NCBI GenBank assembly: GCA_965235115.1
Contig: OZ249444.1
Coordinates: forward strand, 18,228,001-18,292,000
From: Laetmonice hystrix
Taxonomy: Eukaryota
DNA length: 64,000 nt
Reading direction: 5' to 3'
The notes below the pieces were generated by a model, which saw only the letters and a program-made list of their open reading frames with translations, searched no databases and was not told where the DNA came from. This document shows positions 3,672 to 63,846 of the stretch, piece after piece. Position 1 is the stretch's first letter. Every line of letters starts with the position of its first letter. A program made the position numbers and the translations under genes.

Positions 3672-4335
3672 AGCCCTGTGTCCTGAGCCAGCCCCCACCT
3701 CGTCCTTCCACCATGTTTGAGTAGATCACTGGTTTCCACCATTGACTGGGTGGGCCGGACCCATGACCGATCCCGTACCCATAGCCCTGTGTCCTGAGCT
3801 AGCCCCACCTCGTCCTTCCACCATGTTTGAGGAGATCACTGGTTTCCACCATTGACTGGGTGGGCCGGACCCATGACCCATCCTGTACCCATAGCCCTGT
3901 GTCCTGAGCTAGCCCCCACCTCGTCCTTTCACCCTGTTTGAGTAGATCACTGGTTTCCACCATTGACTGGGTGGGCCGGACCCATGACCCATCCTGTACC
4001 CATAGCCCTGTGTCCTGAGCCAGCCCCCACCTCGTCCTTCCACCATGTTTGAGGAGATCACTGGTTTCCACCATTGACTGGGTGGGCCGGACCCATGACC
4101 CATCCTGTACCCATAGCCCTGTGTCCTGAGCTAGCCCCCACCTCGCCCTTCCACCATGTTTGAGTAGATCACTGGTTTCCACCATTGACTGGGTGGGCCG
4201 GACCCATGACCCATCCTGTACCCATAGCCCTGTGTCCTGAGCTAGCCCCCACCTCGCCCTTCCACCATGTTTGAGTAGATCACTGGTTTCCACCATTGAC
4301 TGGGTGGGCCGGACCCATGACCCATCCTGTACCCA
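3672..4335. repeat. 111-bp tandem repeat, 6 copies
   Basis: agccctgtgtcctgagc starts at 3672, 3783, 3893, 4004, 4115 and 4226, and the copies are nearly identical. It explains ORF 3799-4296. Confidence 0.97.
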
Positions 4336-4339
4336 TTAG

Positions 4340-9240: not shown

Positions 9241-12200
9241 CATCATGTATTAGAGGAACCGCGATGAGTTGTTCTCAATGCCGGAATCCCAATTATACGA
9301 GTTGTGCACCACACCTCCAGCCAGCCAATTAAAGAGAAGGGAGGGTTTTCTAGGAAACAACGCCCTACATGCCTGCACGCAAGCCTTGGGAAAACGCACG
9401 TGCATGTCTTGAGGGTCCACACAGCAGAACACTGTTCTTTCCATGATAGAACGTGACATGCTGTCACATAATAATATAATTTCCCGCCATCAGCATGGCA
9501 CTGACCTCAGGCAAACGGGACTGCATGAGGTATACAGAATACTCTCTGAGATAAAAAGGTGACAAGTGATAATAGACGGACAGAAAAACAATGGACCCTA
9601 AGACAAACTAAAGTACACGCAGAGAACCAGGCTGGGACAGTGAGAAGTGGATAGAGTTCACAAAGACAGTCGTACACAACCACCCACCTAGAAAACAAAA
9701 CGCCTCTGGCATATTCATGAGGTAGATCGTAAACTTCACCACAAGTTCAATACGATTACTCCTCTCTTTCCAAACCTTCATCAGATCTGTTCACAGTGTC
9801 CTCTTGCCGACATTATCACCCCAGTAATTATGTCCTTTTATTCCCGCTGGAGTTGACTCCCAGAAACATTTTCTAACTGCTGACTATGCATGAGCAGTGC
9901 GGCAACTGGGGCCGCCGGAGGCAGCGAAAGACAGCGCGGCGCGGTGGGACAATGATGGAACCCAGCGAGGGCTATCTCGTCTCATCAGTTGTGAGATGCT
10001 CCTTCTATCTTATCATCCGAGTTTATTACTTTCTGGTCGTGAATGGAGAAAACGCCCGTCCTCGGGCTTGGCAACAGTTTGACGAGTGCTTACAGCAAAT
10101 GACAAGAAAAAGCCTTACAAAGCCTGCATGCATACATCAGGCCCACCACTGGACGAGGCGAGAGTCGACCTCAATAAGTCTACTACATTTGTGCTATAAT
10201 TGAAAAAATCTTTTTACGTCGTTAACAATGAAGCCGGGTCTCCTCACTCAATTAAAATATAAGAGAGAGGGCTTCCCCCTTGGAAACACTCCAATCTCTT
10301 ATTCTGGAAATCACCCTGAAAGAAAGAGCCATGGGTCAATTGGAAAATTGTTTTCTATCGCCAGACACCAAGCCCGCTTGTAACGTTCTCAGCGATCGTT
10401 CATTGACAAATCTTTATTCCAATACAAACACATGCAACTTCACTTCTTCCGATACGAGTCGGTAAGAAGTGTTGTCGGCGTATTTTGTGCTGCATTGTTG
10501 TCACAGTGACGGGATGTGCAACATAATTGATTTGGACGTGCCAGAAAGCCGACACATGTCATTCTATTACAGACCATGTCAACTCAATAATGCTGCTGCC
10601 ACGGGGCTACTTCGCTTTCTGCAGCGGACGCCGATGCGGCGTGACAACCGCCTCAGAGAGTGGGCTGAGATGTGAACCACTCCCATCCACCTCCACACCC
10701 TCACCTGGAGACGTGACACAGGAGGAGCAGCAGGCGGGATGGCGCCCTCCAGCTCCTCCTGTTTTTTGCCCCCCCCCCCCCTCTGACCATTGAAAGAATT
10801 CTGCCGTTGCTCCGTGCCACAAGGCTCTCTGAACTGTCAGTGGATGTGACCGCGGGCCATACAAACTCCTCCAAACATCACAAACAGTAATTTTCCACAA
10901 AGAGAACACCGAAAAGAAGGGAATGGATTGTGGGAAGTTGCTTCGCCGCAAAGCTCCAATAGAATCGTCGGATGTGAACGATGCTGAAAGAACTTATATT
11001 ACCTCCAAACACCGAGATGGTGAAACCCGATACACAAGGGTCGGTTTGCAACTTCGACCTGAACAATCGATACGACGCGGCACAAGTGGCTCCATCTATA
11101 TTAATTATAGATAATGCATTCACAAGCTGACAAGAACGCCATTAATGATGAATCTCATCGCCCCCCTTTGATGCTATCTTATCTGCTGAACCACAGATTC
11201 CTTTACAGCTGCTAATATGTTAAATACCCCCTACGCGATAACCTCTCCTTTTCTCTTTTTTTACTATGTTGAAACCCGAAGGCTACAAACACCTAGATAC
11301 CGTGGTAAGCCCAGAGCTAGGCGGGGAGTAGGTTCGGGACCTTTGGTGGCGCATGATTACAGCAGCTGCCCGAAAGGCCTCCACTTTATCGGAGAGGAAA
11401 TCTTGATGTATTTCTGGCCACCCCAGTTGAACTCTTTACGTTCAATGTAAAACAGTCTTGTTGATAAACGAGGTGGGGGCTTCGTCTTCCATGAGCGGAT
11501 TTGGTACAATCTCAATGATCTTGCCCGGGTCGCTTCCATTTGGTGTCTGATGGTATTCTGCCTATAGCAAAACAAGCCACTGTCTCTATGTCTGTACCCA
11601 AAGGGATCATTACAGGGCTTGCTACCCCGCTACACCTAAAGTAGGGATCTCAGTGGAGGTACTCTGGCTGTATCCCCTAATCTTGTGCTTCAATGTCAGA
11701 TAATCCCTGCCCCAGCTTAAACCATCTTTGTTGACCCTAGACCTGGCTTCTTACAAACATGACAAATGATTGCTCCCTTTTGGAACTGCATAAGCAATGA
11801 TCCCTCCGGTTAATCTATTCCATACGCGATAACCATTTTGCATGCTCCTCTCGAAGGATGATTGCGTAAAACAGCACCTCAAGTTTACATACACACAGCT
11901 ACTAGATCCAGATAGAGCCCATGCCCCAACCATCTGATGATGACCTCTGAAAAGATCATGCCAAAACAAACCGCAATGCCTTGAAAAAGCTAGACTATCT
12001 AGAACACACACTGCAGTCTTGAACAAAGGGAGAATTTACATTCTCCTTCTGCCTCAGGGCGGTTTTGACCACAGAGTTTTGAGAAATTGTAGAAATAAAA
12101 GAAATGTTCAGAAACAGTTGCCTTAGCGAGATAGAAGAGTGTTATCTTTGACCTACCACGTATGAAAATTAAAGAAGCTCTCGAGCCATCTTTCCTCTCG

Positions 12201-12611: not shown

Positions 12612-14285
12612 GAGTTCTCTCTCCCTCCATCCTCTCCACTGTCCTCTCCCAACCCATCATTCCAGAGTTCTCTCTCCCTCCATCCCCTCCACTGTCCTCT
12701 CCCAACCCATCATTCCAGAGTTCTCTCTCCCTCCATCCCCTCCACTGTCCTCTCCCAACCCATCATTCCAGAGTTCTCTCTCCCTCCATCCCCTCCACTG
12801 TCCTCTCCCAACCCATCATTCCAGAGTTCTCTCCCCTCCATCTCCTCCACTGTCCTCTCCCAACCAATCATTCCAGAGTTCTCTCCCCTCCATCTCCTCC
12901 ACTGTCCTCTCCCAACCCATCATTCCAGAGTTCTCTCTCCCTCCATCTCCTCCACTGTCCTCTACCAACCCATCATTCCAGAGTTCTCTCTCCCTCCATC
13001 CCCTCCACTGTCCTCTACCAACCCATCATTCCAGAGTTCTCTCTCCCTCCATCCCCTCCACTGTCCTCTCCCAACCCATCATTCCAGAGTTCTCTCTCCC
13101 TCCATCCCCTCCACTGTCCTCTCCCTACCCATCATTCCGGAGTTCTCTCTCCCTCCATCTCCCCCACTCTCCTCTCCCAACCCATCATTCCAGAGTTCTC
13201 TCTCCCCTCCATCCCCTCCACTGTCCTCTCCCAACCCATCATTCCAGAGTTCTCTCTCCCTCCATCCCATCCACTGTCCTCTCCCTACCCATCATTCCAG
13301 AGTTCTCTCTCCCTCCATCCCCTCCACTGTCCTCTCCCAACCCATCATTCCAGAGTTCTCTCTCCCTCCATCCCCTCCACTGTCCTCTCCCAACCCATCA
13401 TTCCAGAGTTCTCTCTCCCTCCATCCCATCCACTGTCCTCTCCCTACCCATCATTCCAGAGTTCTCTCTCCCTCCATCCCCTCCACTGTCCTCTCCCAAC
13501 CCATCATTCCAGAGTTCTCTCTCCCTCCATCCCCTCCACTGTCCTCTCCCAACCCATCATTCCAGAGTTCTCTCTCCCTCCATCTCCTCCACTCTCCTCT
13601 ACCAACCCATCATTCCAGCGTTCTCTCTCCCTCCATCTCCTCCACTGTCCTCTACCAACCCATCATTCCAGAGTTCTCTCTCCCTCCATCTTCTCCACTG
13701 TCCTCTCCCAACCCATCATTCCAGAGTTCTCTCTCCCTCCATCTCCTCCACTGTCCTCTCCCAACCCATCATTCCAGAGTTCTCTCTCCCTCCATCTCCT
13801 CCACTCTCCTCTACCAACCCATCATTTCAGAGTTCTCTCTCCCTCCATCTCCTCCACTGTCCTCTCCCAACCCATCATTCCAGAGTTCTCTCCCCCTCCA
13901 TCCCCTCCACTGTCCTCTCCCAACCCATCATTCCAGAGTTCTCTCTCCCTCCATCCCCTCCACTGTCCCCAACCCATCATTGCAGAGCTCTCTCTCCCTC
14001 CATCCCCTCCACTGTCCCCAACCCATCATTGCAGAGCTCTCTCTCCCTCCATCCCCTCCACTGTCCTCTCCCTACCCATCATTCCAGAGTTCTCTCTCCC
14101 TCCATCCCCTCCACTGTCCTCTCCCAACCCATCATTCCAGAGTTCTCTCTCCCTCCATCCCCTCTACTGTCCTCTCCCAACCCATCATTCCAGAGTTCTC
14201 TCTCCCTCCATCCCCTCCACTGTCCTCTCCCAATCCATCATTCCAGAGTTCTCTCTCCCTCCATCCCCTCCACTGTCCTCTCCCA
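12612..14285. repeat. 53-bp pyrimidine-rich minisatellite, about 31 copies
   Basis: Unit gagttctctctccctccatcccctccactgtcctctcccaacccatcattcca. gagt recurs at 12612 and 12665. Shortened variant units occur near 13965-14065. Confidence 0.98.
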
Positions 14286-32692: not shown

Positions 32693-33490
32693 CCTACACC
32701 TGCTGGTTACACCTATCTTAGGGGTGTTCCTACCAGAGCTGGCCTACACCTGCTGGTTACACCTATCTTAGGGGATTCCTGCCAGGGCTGGCCTACACCT
32801 GCTGGTTACACCTATCTTAGGGGTGTTCCTACCAGAGCTGGCCTACACCTGCTGGTTACACCTATCTTAGGGGTGTTCCTACCAGATCTGGCCTACACCT
32901 GCTGGTTACACCTATCTTAGGGGTGTTCCTACCAGAGCTGGCCTACACCTGCTGGTTACACCTATCTTAGGGGTGTTCCTACCAGAGCTGGCCTACACCT
33001 GCTGGTTACACCTATCTTAGGGGTGTTCCTACCAGAGCTGGCCTACACCTGCTGGTTACACCTATCTTAGGGGTGTTCCTACCAGAGCTGGCCTACACCT
33101 GCTGGTTACACCTATCTTAGGGGATTCCTGCCAGGGCTGGCCTACACCTGCTGGTTACACCTATCTTAGGGGTGTTCCTACCAGAGCTGGCCTACACCTG
33201 CTGGTTACACCTATCTTAGGGGTGTTCCTACCAGAGCTGGCCTACACCTGCTGGTTACACCTATCTTAGGGGTGTTCCTACCAGAGCTGGCCTACACCTG
33301 CTGGTTACACCTATCTTAAGGGTGTTCCTACCAGAGCTGGCCTACACCTGCTGGTTACACCTACCTTAGGGGTGTTCCTACCAGAGCTGGCCTACACCTG
33401 CTGGTTACACCTATCTTAGGGGTGTTCCTACCAGAGCTGGCCTACACCTGCTGGTTACACCTATCTTAGGGGGGTTCCTACCAGAGCTGG
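32693..33490. repeat. 50-bp minisatellite, 16 copies
   Basis: Unit cctacacctgctggttacacctatcttaggggtgttcctaccagagctgg. Two copies are a 49-bp variant; 14x50 + 2x49 = 798 bp, which matches the span. Confidence 0.98.
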
Positions 33491-42580: not shown

Positions 42581-44984
42581 CCACTTTTTTCAATACCAAA
42601 TGCCAACACGAAGAAACTTCATGATCAGCTGAGGCCGAAATTCTGCCTCGGGGATGATGCCTTATTCGTTTCTGTTTGAACTGGATGAGGTGGAATCAAG
42701 CAAAGCGGAGCAATTGATGCCCTGATGTAGAAAACGATAGATTTCTTCCCCCCTCATCACGCCTTCACACCCTCGGCTCGATTCATCCAAACAGACTTGC
42801 ACTTTACCCTCAATCATCTTTGAAAAGATTTCCTCCCTCCTGCATGGTTTGAATGCATATAGATTTTCTCATCATCTTTAATCCATCCAGTAATCCATGA
42901 CTCCCAAGCATGTGTTTATGCCGACAAAGGGTCACCTAATCCGTGGTGTTACGTTATTGGTGACAGGCAGGCCGGTCGCCGACCGTAAAGGACCCGGGCC
43001 GGCGGTTACCCCGCCCGCCTGGCCGCCCGCTCGCCAGCCTCAGGCGTGGTCTGTTCTCCAGCCCCACGTTCCCATGCCACTGTGTACAGGCCCCTAGCCC
43101 ACTCTTACGGACGTCTGTATATTACATCCAATAGTAGACATAATTACACAGAGAACCCCTGATACTCGCCTTTCATATCGCAATTCTCAATATGATACAC
43201 AACATTGTACAGCTCTCTCTCTCAGTTTTACGGACCTCAGATCTGTACGTTACGCAATTCAGAAACATAGTAATTAACCGTGTGCTTGTTCACTTCCAGC
43301 GCTCGTGCATTCAGCGAAATTCTTGAGGAGGCCTACGCATGCACTTCAAAAGAATTCATTTTGTTAGATACAACGGCCATGGAAGACAGACTTCCGTAAT
43401 TACAGACACATAATGGTTAAAACTAGCATCATTTCCAGGACTACGACAAAAGAAAAACAGAATAAAAGTTGAAATTTTCTCTTTTACTTCCATTAGTCCA
43501 AGGCTCCACTGCACGCAAACACTGTATTTTTCCAGGCTTGTATAAATTCAGAGAATAATCAGCATTTTTATGGAACTCACGTTTTGAAATACAATGTAGT
43601 TCTAAACAGATATTTAGGTACGCAAGGTTCTTTTTGGCAAATCTCACTTCAACATATCAGTGCACATAGTAGCGACATTATAACGAATGGTTCATTTAAC
43701 GCAATCTTTATTATTTTGTATAAAATATATCGTTGTTAGTGAGTTTCCCGTTATTCGTTTCCGATAACAGTGTTTACCCCAGTAACTGACTTTCTAGTAG
43801 AGTTTTAAATTTCCGACCAGAAATTCCTTACTTTGCTGGGGGAAGGGGAGGCGCAGTACTTGATTTGACGAACTTTATGGAGGAGATTGACCAAACATTG
43901 ATTCATTCGGTAAAAGGAAAACGAAAATTGCATTGCTTTCAATGGCTAAAGAATCGAGTTCGCAAAATCTTGCTAAAATATTAGTTTTGTTCTCCTCTGT
44001 CAAGGCCACCTTTAAAATGTGATTACTAATGTATGATGTATGCACCGTACAATATTTAATGCCCTGGAATATAATAGTAAAACTATAAAAGGATGGAAAT
44101 GATGGATCGTTGTTATCATTAAATGGAAATAATGGATTATTAGATATGCACTTAGCTGAAAAGGTTAAAAAAATGCTTGTGCTCAGGGTACATCAATTGT
44201 TCGCAGACAAGTATAATTACTGTGATTTTAAAACAAGTCGCCAGCACTGCTTAAGTATTTGTTGTCTATCCTGACACTGGGGGAATAAAGCACCACTGTT
44301 AAAACACACTCAGTGGTTTCATTGGTGATCAGTACCCTTATCCTTTTCGTTTCAATCATTTTAAGTTGACGTAGCATTCCTCATTTTAAATCTCAGTGAA
44401 TACCCATATCAATCTTACTGTCTCACAATATTGAAACACCCCTTCAATGTGATAACCTTTTCTCGATCAGATCTAACTGTGAGACTCAAACAACAAGAAG
44501 AGCTATGGCCTCTTCCCCCGGACACTTTTAGTACTGGTTACTGGTTAGATGGGAACATGTATACTAAATTATGTTCATCGCCATTATGTATAATATTGTC
44601 ATTTGCCCCGCACTCGCTGCACCGATACTCTTTGTTGACTTGCACATCTGCCTGTATGTGTATATATTTGTAACTGTATGTACCTACTTGGAAGATCAGG
44701 GTGTATCCCTGAAAGTGGTAATTAAAAAATAAAAAAAACAACAAAAAAAACAAGGAAGGTTGCAGTTAATGCGATCAGGGTTCGATAACTTCAAGGTGTA
44801 TCATCAGATTATTTAGCAAACTATATATGAAATATTCATCGATCAATGCAACGTTTTCAAAAATAATCTACCAAGTATCGTAATGGTTGTACTGTCATAG
44901 GGCAAAGCCATGAATCCCATTTATCCACAAGACCCGGGCACTAACCTTTGGGTGTTTTTTGACTTAGGACCAAGAGACGGAAAA

Positions 44985-45030
44985 CTTACCTGAAATAGAC
45001 AAAACAACAAGATGTTAGTAAGAATAAAAT
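44985..45030 (-). other. Candidate recursive splice site (zero-length exon / ratchet point)
   Basis: Minus strand reads attctTACTAACatcttgttgttttgtctatttcAG|GTAAGTtttcc: consensus branch point (45014-45020), U-rich tract, and CAG directly joined to a consensus donor. Confidence 0.55.
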
Positions 45031-45490
45031 ACACCAACACAGAACAACCTGATCATCCTGGATGTTCAAAAACTGGACATATCATTTCGAGATTTACATT
45101 ACATGGACAGCAACTTGAGCAATAAATAAACCAAAATCTTAAAAACAATTATTTCAAAAGGACTCGTTAAGGCCCATTTGAAGTATTGCATCACAGCATT
45201 GTCATAAGAATATACAGAATAGAGGGAAGCCAGATACGGTGCCATCTAAGCGCAGGTTTCTGGAGCTTTGATCTGGGAGATCAACTTTGAAAAAACAACA
45301 ATTTAAAAAAGGAAATCTTTAAGACGGGTTCAGCGAGTACGCTCAGCTTGGTACCAGACCTCCACTTTCTCCTTACCCCGAGCACAGCGTGTGTACAAAC
45401 AGATGGGTACCATGACGTTTTTTTTAGTAAATTGGATAATTCCTGACTTGTTAAGCTCCCGTCTACCATTGGCTTTGCTGTGCGACTCAC

Positions 45491-53226: not shown

Positions 53227-53672
53227 TTAACCAAAAACAGTTCTGTGGAGTTAAGAGGGTCAGATGTTAACCAAAAACAGTTCTGTGGAGTTAAGAGGGT
53301 CAGATGTAAACCAAAAACAGTTCTGTGGAGTTAAGAGGGTCAGATGTTAACCAAAAACAGTTCTGTGGAGTTAAGAGGGTCAGATGTAAACCAAAAACAG
53401 TTCTGTGGAGTTAAGAGGGTCAGATGTTAACCAATAACAGTTCTGTGGAGTTAAGAGGGTCAGATGTTAACCAAAAACAGTTCTGTGGAGTTAAGAGGGT
53501 CAGATGTTAACCAAAAACAGTTCTGTGGAGTTAAGAGGGTCAGATGTTAACCAAAAACAGTTCTGTGGAGTTAAGAGGGTCAGATGTTAACCAAAAACAG
53601 TTCTGTGGAGTTAAGAGGGTCAGATGTTAACCAAAAACAGTTCTGTGGAGTTAAGAGGGTCAGATGTTAACC
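53227..53672. repeat. 40-bp minisatellite, 11 copies
   Basis: Unit ttaaccaaaaacagttctgtggagttaagagggtcagatg. The array begins and ends with ttaacc. Confidence 0.98.
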
Positions 53673-62786: not shown

Positions 62787-63846
62787 CTACATCTCAACCC
62801 ATACAATAACATCATGACCAATACTACAACATCTCAACCCATACAACAACATCCTGACCAATACTACAACATCTCAACCCATACAACAACATCCTGATCA
62901 ATACAACAACATCTCAACCCATACAACAACATCCTGACCAATACTACAACATCTCAACCCATACAACAACATTCTGATCAATACAACATCTCAACCCATA
63001 CAACAACATCCTGACCAATACTACAACATCTCAACCCATACAACAACATCCTGACCAATACTACAACATCTCAACCCATACAATAACATCCTGACCAATA
63101 CTACAACATCTCAACCCATACAATAACATCCTGACCAATACTACAACATCTCAACCCATACAACAACATCCTGACCAATACTACAACATCTCAACCCATA
63201 CAACAACATCCTGACCAATACTACAACATCTCAACCCATACAACAACATCCTGACCTATAGGTCTACAACATCTCAACCCATACAACAACATCCTGACCA
63301 ATACTACAACATCTCAACCCATACAACAACATCCTGACCAATACTACAACATCTCAACCCATACAACAACATCCTGACCAATACTACAACATCTCAACCC
63401 ATACAACAACATCCTGACCAATACTACAACATCTCAACCCATACAACAACATCCTGACCAATAATACAACATCTCAACCCATACAACAACATCCTGACCA
63501 ATACTACAACATCTCAACCCATACAACAACATCCTGACCAATACTACAACATCTCAACCCATACAACAACATCTGAACCCATACAATAACATCCTGACCA
63601 ATACTACAACATCTCAACCCATACAATAACATCCTGACCAACACTACAACATCTCAACCCATACAATAACATCCTGACCAATACTACAACATCTCAACCC
63701 ATACAATAACATCCTGACCAACACTACAACATATCAACCCATACAATAACATCCTGACCAATACTACAACATCTCAACCCATACAACAACATCCTGACCA
63801 ATACTACAACATCTCAACCCATACAACAACATCCTGACCAATACTA
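62787..63846. repeat. 40-bp A/C-rich minisatellite, about 26 copies
   Basis: Unit caacatctcaacccatacaacaacatcctgaccaatacta, with only one G per unit on the plus strand. Confidence 0.98.

What the first reader, a model, noticed from the sequence alone, without database searches (positions are those of the whole stretch)
44985..45030. Near-textbook recursive-splicing ratchet point in an apparent invertebrate giant intron
Seen: on the minus strand a perfect TACTAAC branch point, a ~24-nt U-rich tract and TTTCAG are followed with zero exonic bases by GTAAGT. It is the only site I found where all four elements are near-consensus. Established: AG|GT(A/G)AGT ratchet points drive stepwise removal of very long introns in Drosophila and some vertebrate neural genes. 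Inference: the window lies inside a long minus-strand intron that is spliced recursively. I am not aware of this being well described in molluscs or relatives.
Basis: partly seen in the sequence, partly recalled or inferred. Interest (0 to 1): 0.7.

Follow-up and report, generated by a model that had tools for sequence, protein, structure and literature searches.

The report
Probable recursive splice site, unknown host
A worm genome carries a near-perfect "intron end fused to intron start" signal, paired with a second one 20 kb upstream on the same strand, so a very long transcript is probably spliced in steps as in flies; no RNA data or host gene could be found to prove it.

Summary
The motif is real. 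On the minus strand, TACTAAC (45020-45014), a T-rich tract and TTTCAG abut GTAAGT at 44990|44989. It is single-copy. It meets the fly ratchet-point rules I could test: TT at -5/-6, branch A at -26, long pyrimidine tract.

Its best support lies just outside the window. A stronger CTCTTTCCAG|GTAAGT site sits 20.3 kb upstream on the same strand. The plus strand has no comparable site in 264 kb, and simulation expects about 0.01.

Genome-wide, such motifs are 2.1-2.6 times more common than a reversed-pattern control. They cluster on one strand (10 same-strand versus 1 opposite-strand neighbour pairs within 40 kb). Two lie upstream of the only ephrin-domain exon, in sense orientation.

The window sits in a 146-kb compositional domain (minus strand G>C and T>A; CpG o/e 0.68 versus 0.85 beyond). 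This fits a long transcribed unit.

The perfect TACTAAC is luck: that composite is not enriched genome-wide. No exon, host gene, RNA run or related genome was available, so use of the site is inferred.

The mechanism is known. This scan had already flagged similar sites in many other introns of this genome. This is one more member, notable only for lying in a gene-poor stretch beside a SoxB pair.

The parts
45014..45020 (-). Candidate branch point TACTAAC; the branch A lies 26 nt upstream of the 3' splice junction
   Evidence: The distance falls within the -36 to -21 range of fly ratchet-point branch points (10.1101/006163). The perfect heptamer itself is not enriched genome-wide.
44993..45013 (-). 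T-rich pyrimidine tract (16 of 20 pyrimidines before CAG), with TT at -5/-6
   Evidence: acceptor score 7.6 bits with a generic matrix. TT at -5/-6 is found in 99.5% of fly ratchet points.
44990..44992 (-). CAG, the 3' splice-site end of the upstream intron segment
44984..44989 (-). GTAAGT, a consensus 5' splice site directly abutting the AG; it would be regenerated after the first splicing step
   Evidence: donor score 8.7 bits
44946..44989 (-). Possible 44-nt cryptic RS-exon that would be defined and then skipped; two of its three frames contain stops
   Evidence: This is weak evidence: a donor this good within 100 nt is expected by chance about 13% of the time.
44940..44945 (-). Weaker downstream donor AAG|GTTAGT that would close the cryptic RS-exon
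   Evidence: 4.0 bits, against 8.7 for the ratchet donor
10699..10728 (-). Third-ranked, weaker composite site CTCCAG|GTGAGG, 34.3 kb downstream on the same strand; it has CT rather than TT at -6/-5
   Evidence: score 9.6; the best plus-strand site scores 8.2

Best explanation
The site is most likely a fly-type recursive splice site (ratchet point) in a very long minus-strand transcript. That transcript would run through the whole window and start about 80-100 kb upstream of the site, near 126-146 kb on the extended window scale.

Inferred mechanism: U2AF and U2 recognise the TT-containing pyrimidine tract, the branch A at -26 and the CAG. The upstream exon, or the previous ratchet point, is joined to position 44989. 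That junction regenerates ...AG|GTAAGT as a strong 5' splice site, which then removes the next segment. A 44-nt cryptic exon closed by a weaker GTTAGT donor may help define the site and then be skipped.

The site would act in series with a stronger site 20.3 kb upstream (C10:18293277, L011:1277), and perhaps with a weaker one at 10705.

Shown: the motif, its uniqueness, its partner, the genome-wide enrichment and same-strand clustering, and the compositional domain. Inferred: transcription, the host intron, and every splicing step.
For: (1) The motif is near-consensus. It meets the fly ratchet-point features reported by Duff et al.: TT at -5/-6, branch A at -26 and a prominent pyrimidine tract.

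(2) In 264 kb the three best acceptor+donor composites are all on the minus strand: 65277 (15.4), 44990 (12.6) and 10705 (9.6). The best plus-strand site scores 8.2.

(3) Both minus-strand CAGGTAAGT 9-mers in 264 kb are preceded by at least 16/20 pyrimidines, a property of 1.6% of positions. A second-order Markov simulation gives 0.01 such sites per 264 kb against 2 observed.

(4) The 20.3-kb spacing matches fly segment sizes (mean 18 kb, median 16.4 kb). It also matches other same-strand pairs in this genome (17-35 kb).

(5) Genome-wide, Y6-N-CAG|GTAAGT has 190 matches against 74 in the control. The GTGAGT variant has 111 against 52. Neighbouring sites within 40 kb are 10 same-strand against 1 opposite; within 100 kb, 15 against 2.

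(6) Two strict sites lie 42 and 66 kb upstream of the genome's only ephrin-domain exon, on its strand.

(7) Every 6-kb bin from 1 to 126 kb has C>G on the plus strand (mean skew -0.079, AT skew +0.026). The skew flips near 146 kb. CpG o/e is 0.68 up to about 146-150 kb and 0.85 beyond, as expected for a methylated, transcribed gene body in an annelid (PMC11292947).

(8) Both sites are single-copy and share nothing but the motif.

(9) Across three haplotypes the nearest listed variants lie 3 and 9 nt upstream of TACTAAC, and none is listed inside the motif.
Against: No exon or host gene was identified on the minus strand in 264 kb. ORFs, crude exon prediction and two Pfam scans gave nothing.

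No RNA data exist, so there are no junction, sawtooth or lariat reads. There is no cross-species comparison.

Genome-wide enrichment of the strict motif is only about 2-2.6-fold, and tandem arrays inflate the counts. A single strict site therefore has roughly even odds of being chance.

The direction rule for GC skew is uncalibrated in annelids. Flies show C>G on the sense strand (PMC5786239), which would conflict with my reading; only T>A is general.

The domain could instead reflect replication or methylated repeats. The RS-exon donor is weak at this site and absent at the partner site. The haplotype table was truncated (45 rows not shown).
Confidence: 0.58

Rival explanations
1. Ordinary splice signals of an unannotated short exon. 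The AG at 44990 would be the acceptor of a real, perhaps alternative, 44-nt exon that stays in the mature RNA (an 'expressed RS-exon'). Alternatively, GTAAGT would be the donor of an exon that ends in a pyrimidine-rich stretch.
For: A donor AAG|GTTAGT lies 44 nt downstream, and one frame of the 44 nt is open. Flies have a minority of expressed exons with ratchet-point features (PMC8605326). At the partner site, a 90-nt 'exon' ending at its GTAAGT can be drawn from an upstream acceptor.
Against: The downstream donor is much weaker than the abutting GTAAGT (4.0 against 8.7 bits), which predicts skipping. A donor of that quality is expected by chance within 100 nt about 13% of the time. The sequences do not look coding and hit no Pfam family.
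Confidence: 0.17
2. A chance occurrence in untranscribed, gene-poor DNA beside the SoxB cluster, with no function.
For: No exon was found in 264 kb. The TACTAAC composite is at chance level genome-wide. The reversed-pattern control still gives 74 and 52 strict matches, so chance sites exist. Nothing shows the region is transcribed.
Against: Two consensus sites on one strand 20 kb apart are expected about 0.01 times per 264 kb. Same-strand pairing is a genome-wide property of these motifs. Both sites carry TT at -5/-6. By my count from the list, so do all eight GTAAGT sites that sit in same-strand pairs, against 42 of 92 strict sites overall. The skew and CpG-depletion domain also argue against it.
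Confidence: 0.15
3. A selected U1/U2AF-binding element in a long transcript that acts without completing recursive splicing. It could, for example, be a U1 'telescripting' site that protects the long transcript from premature polyadenylation, or a decoy.
For: AATAAA plus ATTAAA number 119 on the minus strand against 165 on the plus strand over 1-126 kb. This fits selection against premature polyadenylation in a minus-strand transcript.
Against: Most of that asymmetry follows from the A/T skew itself (my estimate). A pure U1 site needs no pyrimidine tract, branch point or AG. The composite architecture is the one shown to act as a ratchet point in flies.
Confidence: 0.06

Closest known systems
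Drosophila zero-nucleotide ratchet points (Hatton 1998; Burnette 2005; Duff et al., bioRxiv 10.1101/006163; Joseph et al., PMC8605326)
   Same: Juxtaposed (Y)n-N-CAG|GTAAGT, TT at -5/-6, a branch point about 26 nt upstream, and a long pyrimidine tract. There are several same-strand sites about 20 kb apart, and a possible weak downstream donor that would form a skipped RS-exon.
   Different: The animal is an annelid-like spiralian, not an insect. No RNA intermediates, lariats or conservation are shown. The host gene and flanking exons are unknown. Genome-wide enrichment measured here is about 2-2.6-fold over a reversed-pattern control. Shepard et al. report 20-fold for intron against complementary strand in fly, but the two measures are not directly comparable.
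Computationally predicted RP-site enrichment in large introns of non-drosophilid invertebrates (Shepard et al. 2009, PMC2773006)
   Same: A sequence-only inference from strand-specific excess of composite sites: sea urchin 8.2x, beetle 8x, bee 4x, mosquito >10x. The site density of 0.5-2 per 100 kb is comparable to 2-3 sites in 126-146 kb here.
   Different: That study covered no spiralian and used annotated introns. Here the intron itself is inferred.
Vertebrate RS-exon recursive splicing (Sibley et al. 2015; reviewed in PMC5126111)
   Same: A cryptic exon starting with a 5' splice-site sequence, with competition between the regenerated donor and a downstream donor, and stops in the cryptic exon.
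   Different: Vertebrate sites are rare and are not enriched over the complementary strand. They depend on a clear RS-exon, and the RS-exon evidence here is weak.
Other predicted ratchet points in this same genome flagged by this scan (ephrin, Eph, dachsous, srGAP, PLC-beta, KDM3, RBMS introns)
   Same: The same motif class, same-strand series and spacing of tens of kb. All likewise lack RNA proof.
   Different: Those sit in introns of identified genes. This pair sits in a stretch with no recognisable exon, next to a SoxB gene pair.

Membership tests
Fly-type recursive splice site (ratchet point) | 3' splice-site AG directly abutting a consensus 5' splice site (AG|GTRAGT) | tested here: met
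   CAG|GTAAGT at 44992-44984 on the minus strand
Fly-type recursive splice site (ratchet point) | Prominent pyrimidine tract with TT at -5/-6 (99.5% of fly sites) | tested here: met
   16/20 pyrimidines upstream, with -4 to -6 = TTT. The partner site at C10:18293277 has 17/20 and TT.
Fly-type recursive splice site (ratchet point) | Branch point 21-36 nt upstream of the AG | tested here: inconclusive
   The A of TACTAAC lies at -26. Its use as a branch point needs lariat reads, and the heptamer is not enriched genome-wide.
Fly-type recursive splice site (ratchet point) | Lies in the sense strand of a long intron (>11 kb) of an expressed gene | tested here: inconclusive
   No exon or gene was found. 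Indirect support comes from the skew and CpG-depletion domain over 1-146 kb and the same-strand partner site.
Fly-type recursive splice site (ratchet point) | Composite sites enriched on one strand and occurring in same-strand series | tested here: met
   Locally there are 2-3 sites on the minus strand and 0 on the plus strand in 264 kb. Genome-wide the counts are 190 against 74 and 111 against 52. Neighbour pairs within 40 kb are 10 same-strand against 1 opposite.
Fly-type recursive splice site (ratchet point) | Splicing intermediates: exon-to-ratchet-point junction reads, sawtooth read density, segment lariats | not testable with these tools
   No RNA run exists for this organism; only three DNA contig sets were found.
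Fly-type recursive splice site (ratchet point) | Sequence conservation above flanking intron in related species | not testable with these tools
   The genome tools hold no relatives. The closest laccase homologue's contig gave no DNA. Three haplotypes show no listed variant in the motif, but the power is low and the table was truncated.
RS-exon type recursive splicing (vertebrates; also required in flies per PMC8605326) | Cryptic exon after the site, closed by a weaker downstream donor | tested here: inconclusive
   Site 44990 has AAG|GTTAGT at +44 (4.0 bits). The partner site has none above 3.3 bits within 150 nt, and the chance rate is about 13% per 100 nt.

The most novel reading that the evidence does not exclude
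The two or three ratchet points may belong to a transcription unit of at least 126-146 kb that has no protein-coding exons and flanks a SoxB gene pair. That would be a giant long non-coding RNA, loosely comparable to the vertebrate SOX-flanking overlapping transcripts, removed in about 20-kb steps. It would be recursive splicing in a spiralian and in a non-coding host. The sharp skew and CpG-depletion boundary would mark its promoter next to an unmethylated SoxB regulatory domain.
Probability: 0.12. Interest if true: 0.55.

Novelty: new member of a known kind. Interest (0 to 1): 0.3.

Why it matters
If RNA data confirm it, this site and its many siblings in this genome would extend fly-type recursive splicing to Spiralia. 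Together with insects and the sea-urchin prediction, that would suggest stepwise removal of long introns is an old bilaterian habit rather than an insect speciality. On its own this site adds little beyond what the scan already reported for other introns here. Its practical value is as a strand and extent marker for an unannotated transcript longer than 100 kb beside a SoxB cluster. It is also a clean target for an RT-PCR test.

Tried and rejected
RNA evidence. The run search found only three DNA-like contig sets from one sample. Laying them gave haplotype differences but no expression data.

Host gene.
- ORF lists, an amino-acid-composition score (it barely recognised the known laccase, so I dropped it), a strict acceptor-ORF-donor exon scan and inspection of the strongest acceptors gave nothing convincing.
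- Two Pfam scans of 20 ORFs hit only the SoxB and laccase genes.
- Rfam found no RNA family in 214 kb.
- I guessed hosts from the vertebrate SOX neighbourhood. Glypican, HS6ST-like and MBNL-like genes are on the same chromosome but 6-9 Mb away.
- The closest laccase homologue's contig (54% identity) returned no DNA.

Rejected ideas.
- TACTAAC as a meaningful fourth element: the composite is not enriched.
- Repeat or transposon origin: both sites are single-copy and unrelated to each other.
- The donor-motif excess on the minus strand and the poly(A)-signal depletion as independent strand evidence: both largely follow from base skew.
- A roughly 20-kb periodic series through weaker sites at 83431, 105965 and 125932: the plus strand has equally many sites of that quality.

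Full report
**Observation.**
- The minus strand reads TACTAAC (45020-45014), then ATCTTGTTGTTTTGTCTATTT, then CAG with its G at 44990. GTAAGT follows immediately at 44989-44984.
- The full composite occurs once in the window, against 0.01 expected from shuffles.
- It is the best acceptor+donor composite in the window on either strand.
- The surrounding 550 bp are unique in the 627-Mb genome; only a 50-bp dispersed repeat at 44700-44750 has other copies.
- The window is G000:C10:18228001-18292000.
- Earlier notes of this scan call the animal a marine worm. The nearest homologues of a neighbouring laccase gene include the annelids Ridgeia and Lamellibrachia.

**Which part of the motif is more than chance.** The perfect TACTAAC is not.
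- Genome-wide, TACTAAC-N(8-38)-YAG|GTRAGT has 68 matches. I count these as 27 distinct loci once three tandem arrays are collapsed. The reversed-pattern control has 40.
- Only about four of those loci, this one included, also have a good pyrimidine tract.
- The informative part is the pyrimidine tract plus CAG|GTAAGT. Y6-N-CAG|GTAAGT has 190 matches against 74 in the control, and a tandem array on C12 inflates the count. The GTGAGT variant has 111 against 52.
- A lone strict site is therefore only about an even bet.

**The partner site.** I fetched 200 kb on the high-coordinate side. Coordinates above 64000 continue the window scale.
- At 65277 (C10:18293277, L011:1277) the minus strand carries CTTGTTCTTTCTCTTTCCAG|GTAAGT. 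This is stronger than the reported site and lies 20.3 kb upstream of it.
The best plus-strand site scores 8.2.
- Both minus-strand CAGGTAAGT 9-mers are preceded by at least 16/20 pyrimidines, a property of 1.6% of positions. A second-order Markov simulation gives 0.01 such sites per 264 kb.
- The two sites are single-copy and share only the motif.

**Genome-wide behaviour of the motif class.**
- I merged the two strict lists for contigs C1-C11. Neighbouring sites within 40 kb are on the same strand 10 times and on opposite strands once. Within 100 kb the counts are 15 and 2.
- Typical spacings are 17-35 kb, like the 20.3 kb here.
- The genome's only ephrin-domain exon is at C11:18268650-18268838 on the minus strand. 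Two strict sites lie 42 and 66 kb upstream of it on that strand.
- By my count from the list, 42 of 92 strict GTAAGT sites have TT at -5/-6, where about 31% is expected. All eight sites in same-strand pairs under 40 kb have TT.

**Comparison with fly ratchet points** (Duff et al., bioRxiv 10.1101/006163).
- Fly sites have TT at -5/-6 in 99.5% of cases. Their branch points lie 21-36 nt upstream and they have a prominent pyrimidine tract.
- Fly segments average 18 kb (median 16.4 kb) and sit in introns of 11-133 kb.
- Site 44990 has TTT at -4 to -6 and a candidate branch A at -26. Site 65277 also has TT. The segment between them is 20.3 kb.
- Site 10705 has CT at -6/-5 and a poorer donor, so I treat it as doubtful.
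- Flies also need a cryptic RS-exon that is then skipped (PMC8605326). Here AAG|GTTAGT lies 44 nt downstream (4.0 bits, against 8.7 for the abutting donor). A donor that good is expected by chance in about 13% of 100-nt stretches, and site 65277 has none.

**Is the window transcribed on the minus strand?** No exon could be found.
- ORF lists, a composition score, a strict exon scan and two Pfam scans recognised only two genes. One is a two-exon multicopper oxidase on the plus strand at 132.3-137 kb. The other is an intronless SoxB-type gene on the minus strand at 208.2-209.1 kb.
- A second SoxB-like gene lies 59 kb further up. Rfam found nothing.
- Two compositional signals mark one domain. 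After masking tandem repeats, every 6-kb bin from 1 to 126 kb has C>G on the plus strand (mean GC skew -0.079) and mostly A>T (+0.026). The skew flips near 146 kb to +0.02.
- CpG observed/expected is 0.68 up to about 146-150 kb and 0.85 beyond.
- In annelids, as in most invertebrates, methylation concentrates on bodies of transcribed genes (PMC11292947). The CpG-poor domain therefore fits a long transcribed unit abutting an unmethylated SoxB domain.
- T>A on the sense strand is general. G>C is the vertebrate rule, while flies show C>G (PMC5786239). The strand reading from skew is thus suggestive only, and I could not calibrate it in this genome.
- Poly(A)-signal depletion and donor-motif excess on the minus strand largely follow from the skew itself.

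**Other data.**
- No RNA run exists for this organism.
- The three DNA contig sets represent three haplotypes. The nearest listed differences are at 45023 and 45029, which lie 3 and 9 nt upstream of TACTAAC. None is listed between 44381 and 45022.
- Part of that stretch is a skipped repeat and 45 rows were not shown, so this is weak evidence.

**Verdict.**
- Most likely (about 0.58), this is a functional ratchet point. It would be one of at least two in a minus-strand transcript longer than 100 kb whose exons I could not find.
- Rivals are an ordinary or alternatively included short exon (0.17), chance (0.15) and a U1/U2AF element without completed recursion (0.06).

**Novelty.**
- The mechanism is known from flies. 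Strand-specific enrichment of such sites was already computed for insects and sea urchin (PMC2773006).
- I found no paper on annelids or molluscs.
- This scan has already reported the same architecture in many other introns of this genome. The finding is therefore a new member of a known kind and of modest interest. What sets it apart is the lack of any recognisable host gene and its position beside a SoxB pair.

Noticed in passing
L011:1271-1300 (C10:18293271-18293300), 1.3 kb beyond the window end: A second, stronger composite site CTCTTTCCAG|GTAAGT on the minus strand, 20.3 kb upstream of the reported one. It is single-copy. A 45-nt tandem repeat lies 100-285 nt upstream of it (L011:1377-1562).
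   Followed up: yes
window 1-64000 and L011-L019, boundary near L019:2000-6000 (about 146-150 kb on the extended scale): A compositional domain boundary. To the left, the plus strand has C>G (-0.079) and CpG o/e is 0.68. To the right, the skew is +0.02 and CpG o/e is 0.85. It could be a promoter or methylation boundary, or a replication-related skew jump.
   Followed up: partly
L025:4230-5102 (-) and C10:18495520-18495726 (-): Two intronless SoxB-type genes (HMG box plus SOXp) lie 59 kb apart on the same strand, forming a SoxB cluster inside the high-CpG domain. A third is at C10:28374950 (+).
   Followed up: partly
L017:8330-8815 (+) and L018:883-2949 (+): A two-exon multicopper oxidase (laccase-like) gene on the plus strand, inside or at the edge of the putative minus-strand transcription unit. 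Its best database relative is only 54% identical.
   Followed up: partly
C10:9.5-12.2 Mb and 18.4-18.5 Mb: MBNL-like, glypican, HS6ST-like and SoxB genes share chromosome C10. From memory, the same families are linked around vertebrate SOX1/2/3/21, which hints at an old linkage group.
   Followed up: no
window 12612-14285; 62789-63833; 3672-4336; 32693-33490; 53227-53672: Large, young tandem arrays with periods of 53, 40, 111, 50 and 40 bp and 95-98% identity. The 53-bp array is strongly C-rich on the plus strand and is open in three frames by composition alone.
   Followed up: no
C12:26313499-26313848 (-), C8:840744-842690 (-), C13:794407-795352 (+), C7:10218025-10218460 (+): Tandem arrays elsewhere in the genome whose unit happens to contain a ratchet-like motif. 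They inflate genome-wide motif counts and should be collapsed in any census.
   Followed up: partly
window 45136-45289: Even the reference-like run holds a second contig with 10 differences in 154 bp, so this is a locally very divergent haplotype just upstream of the site. Runs X2 and X3 differ from the reference by about 0.6-2.7% here.
   Followed up: no
L015:6752-6803 (-) (110752-110803 on the extended scale): A 52-nt candidate exon with a very strong acceptor (12 bits), an ATG in an ACAATGG context and a CAG|GTGTGT donor. It sits next to palindromic, repeat-like sequence. It could be an exon of the host transcript, but this is unsupported.
   Followed up: partly
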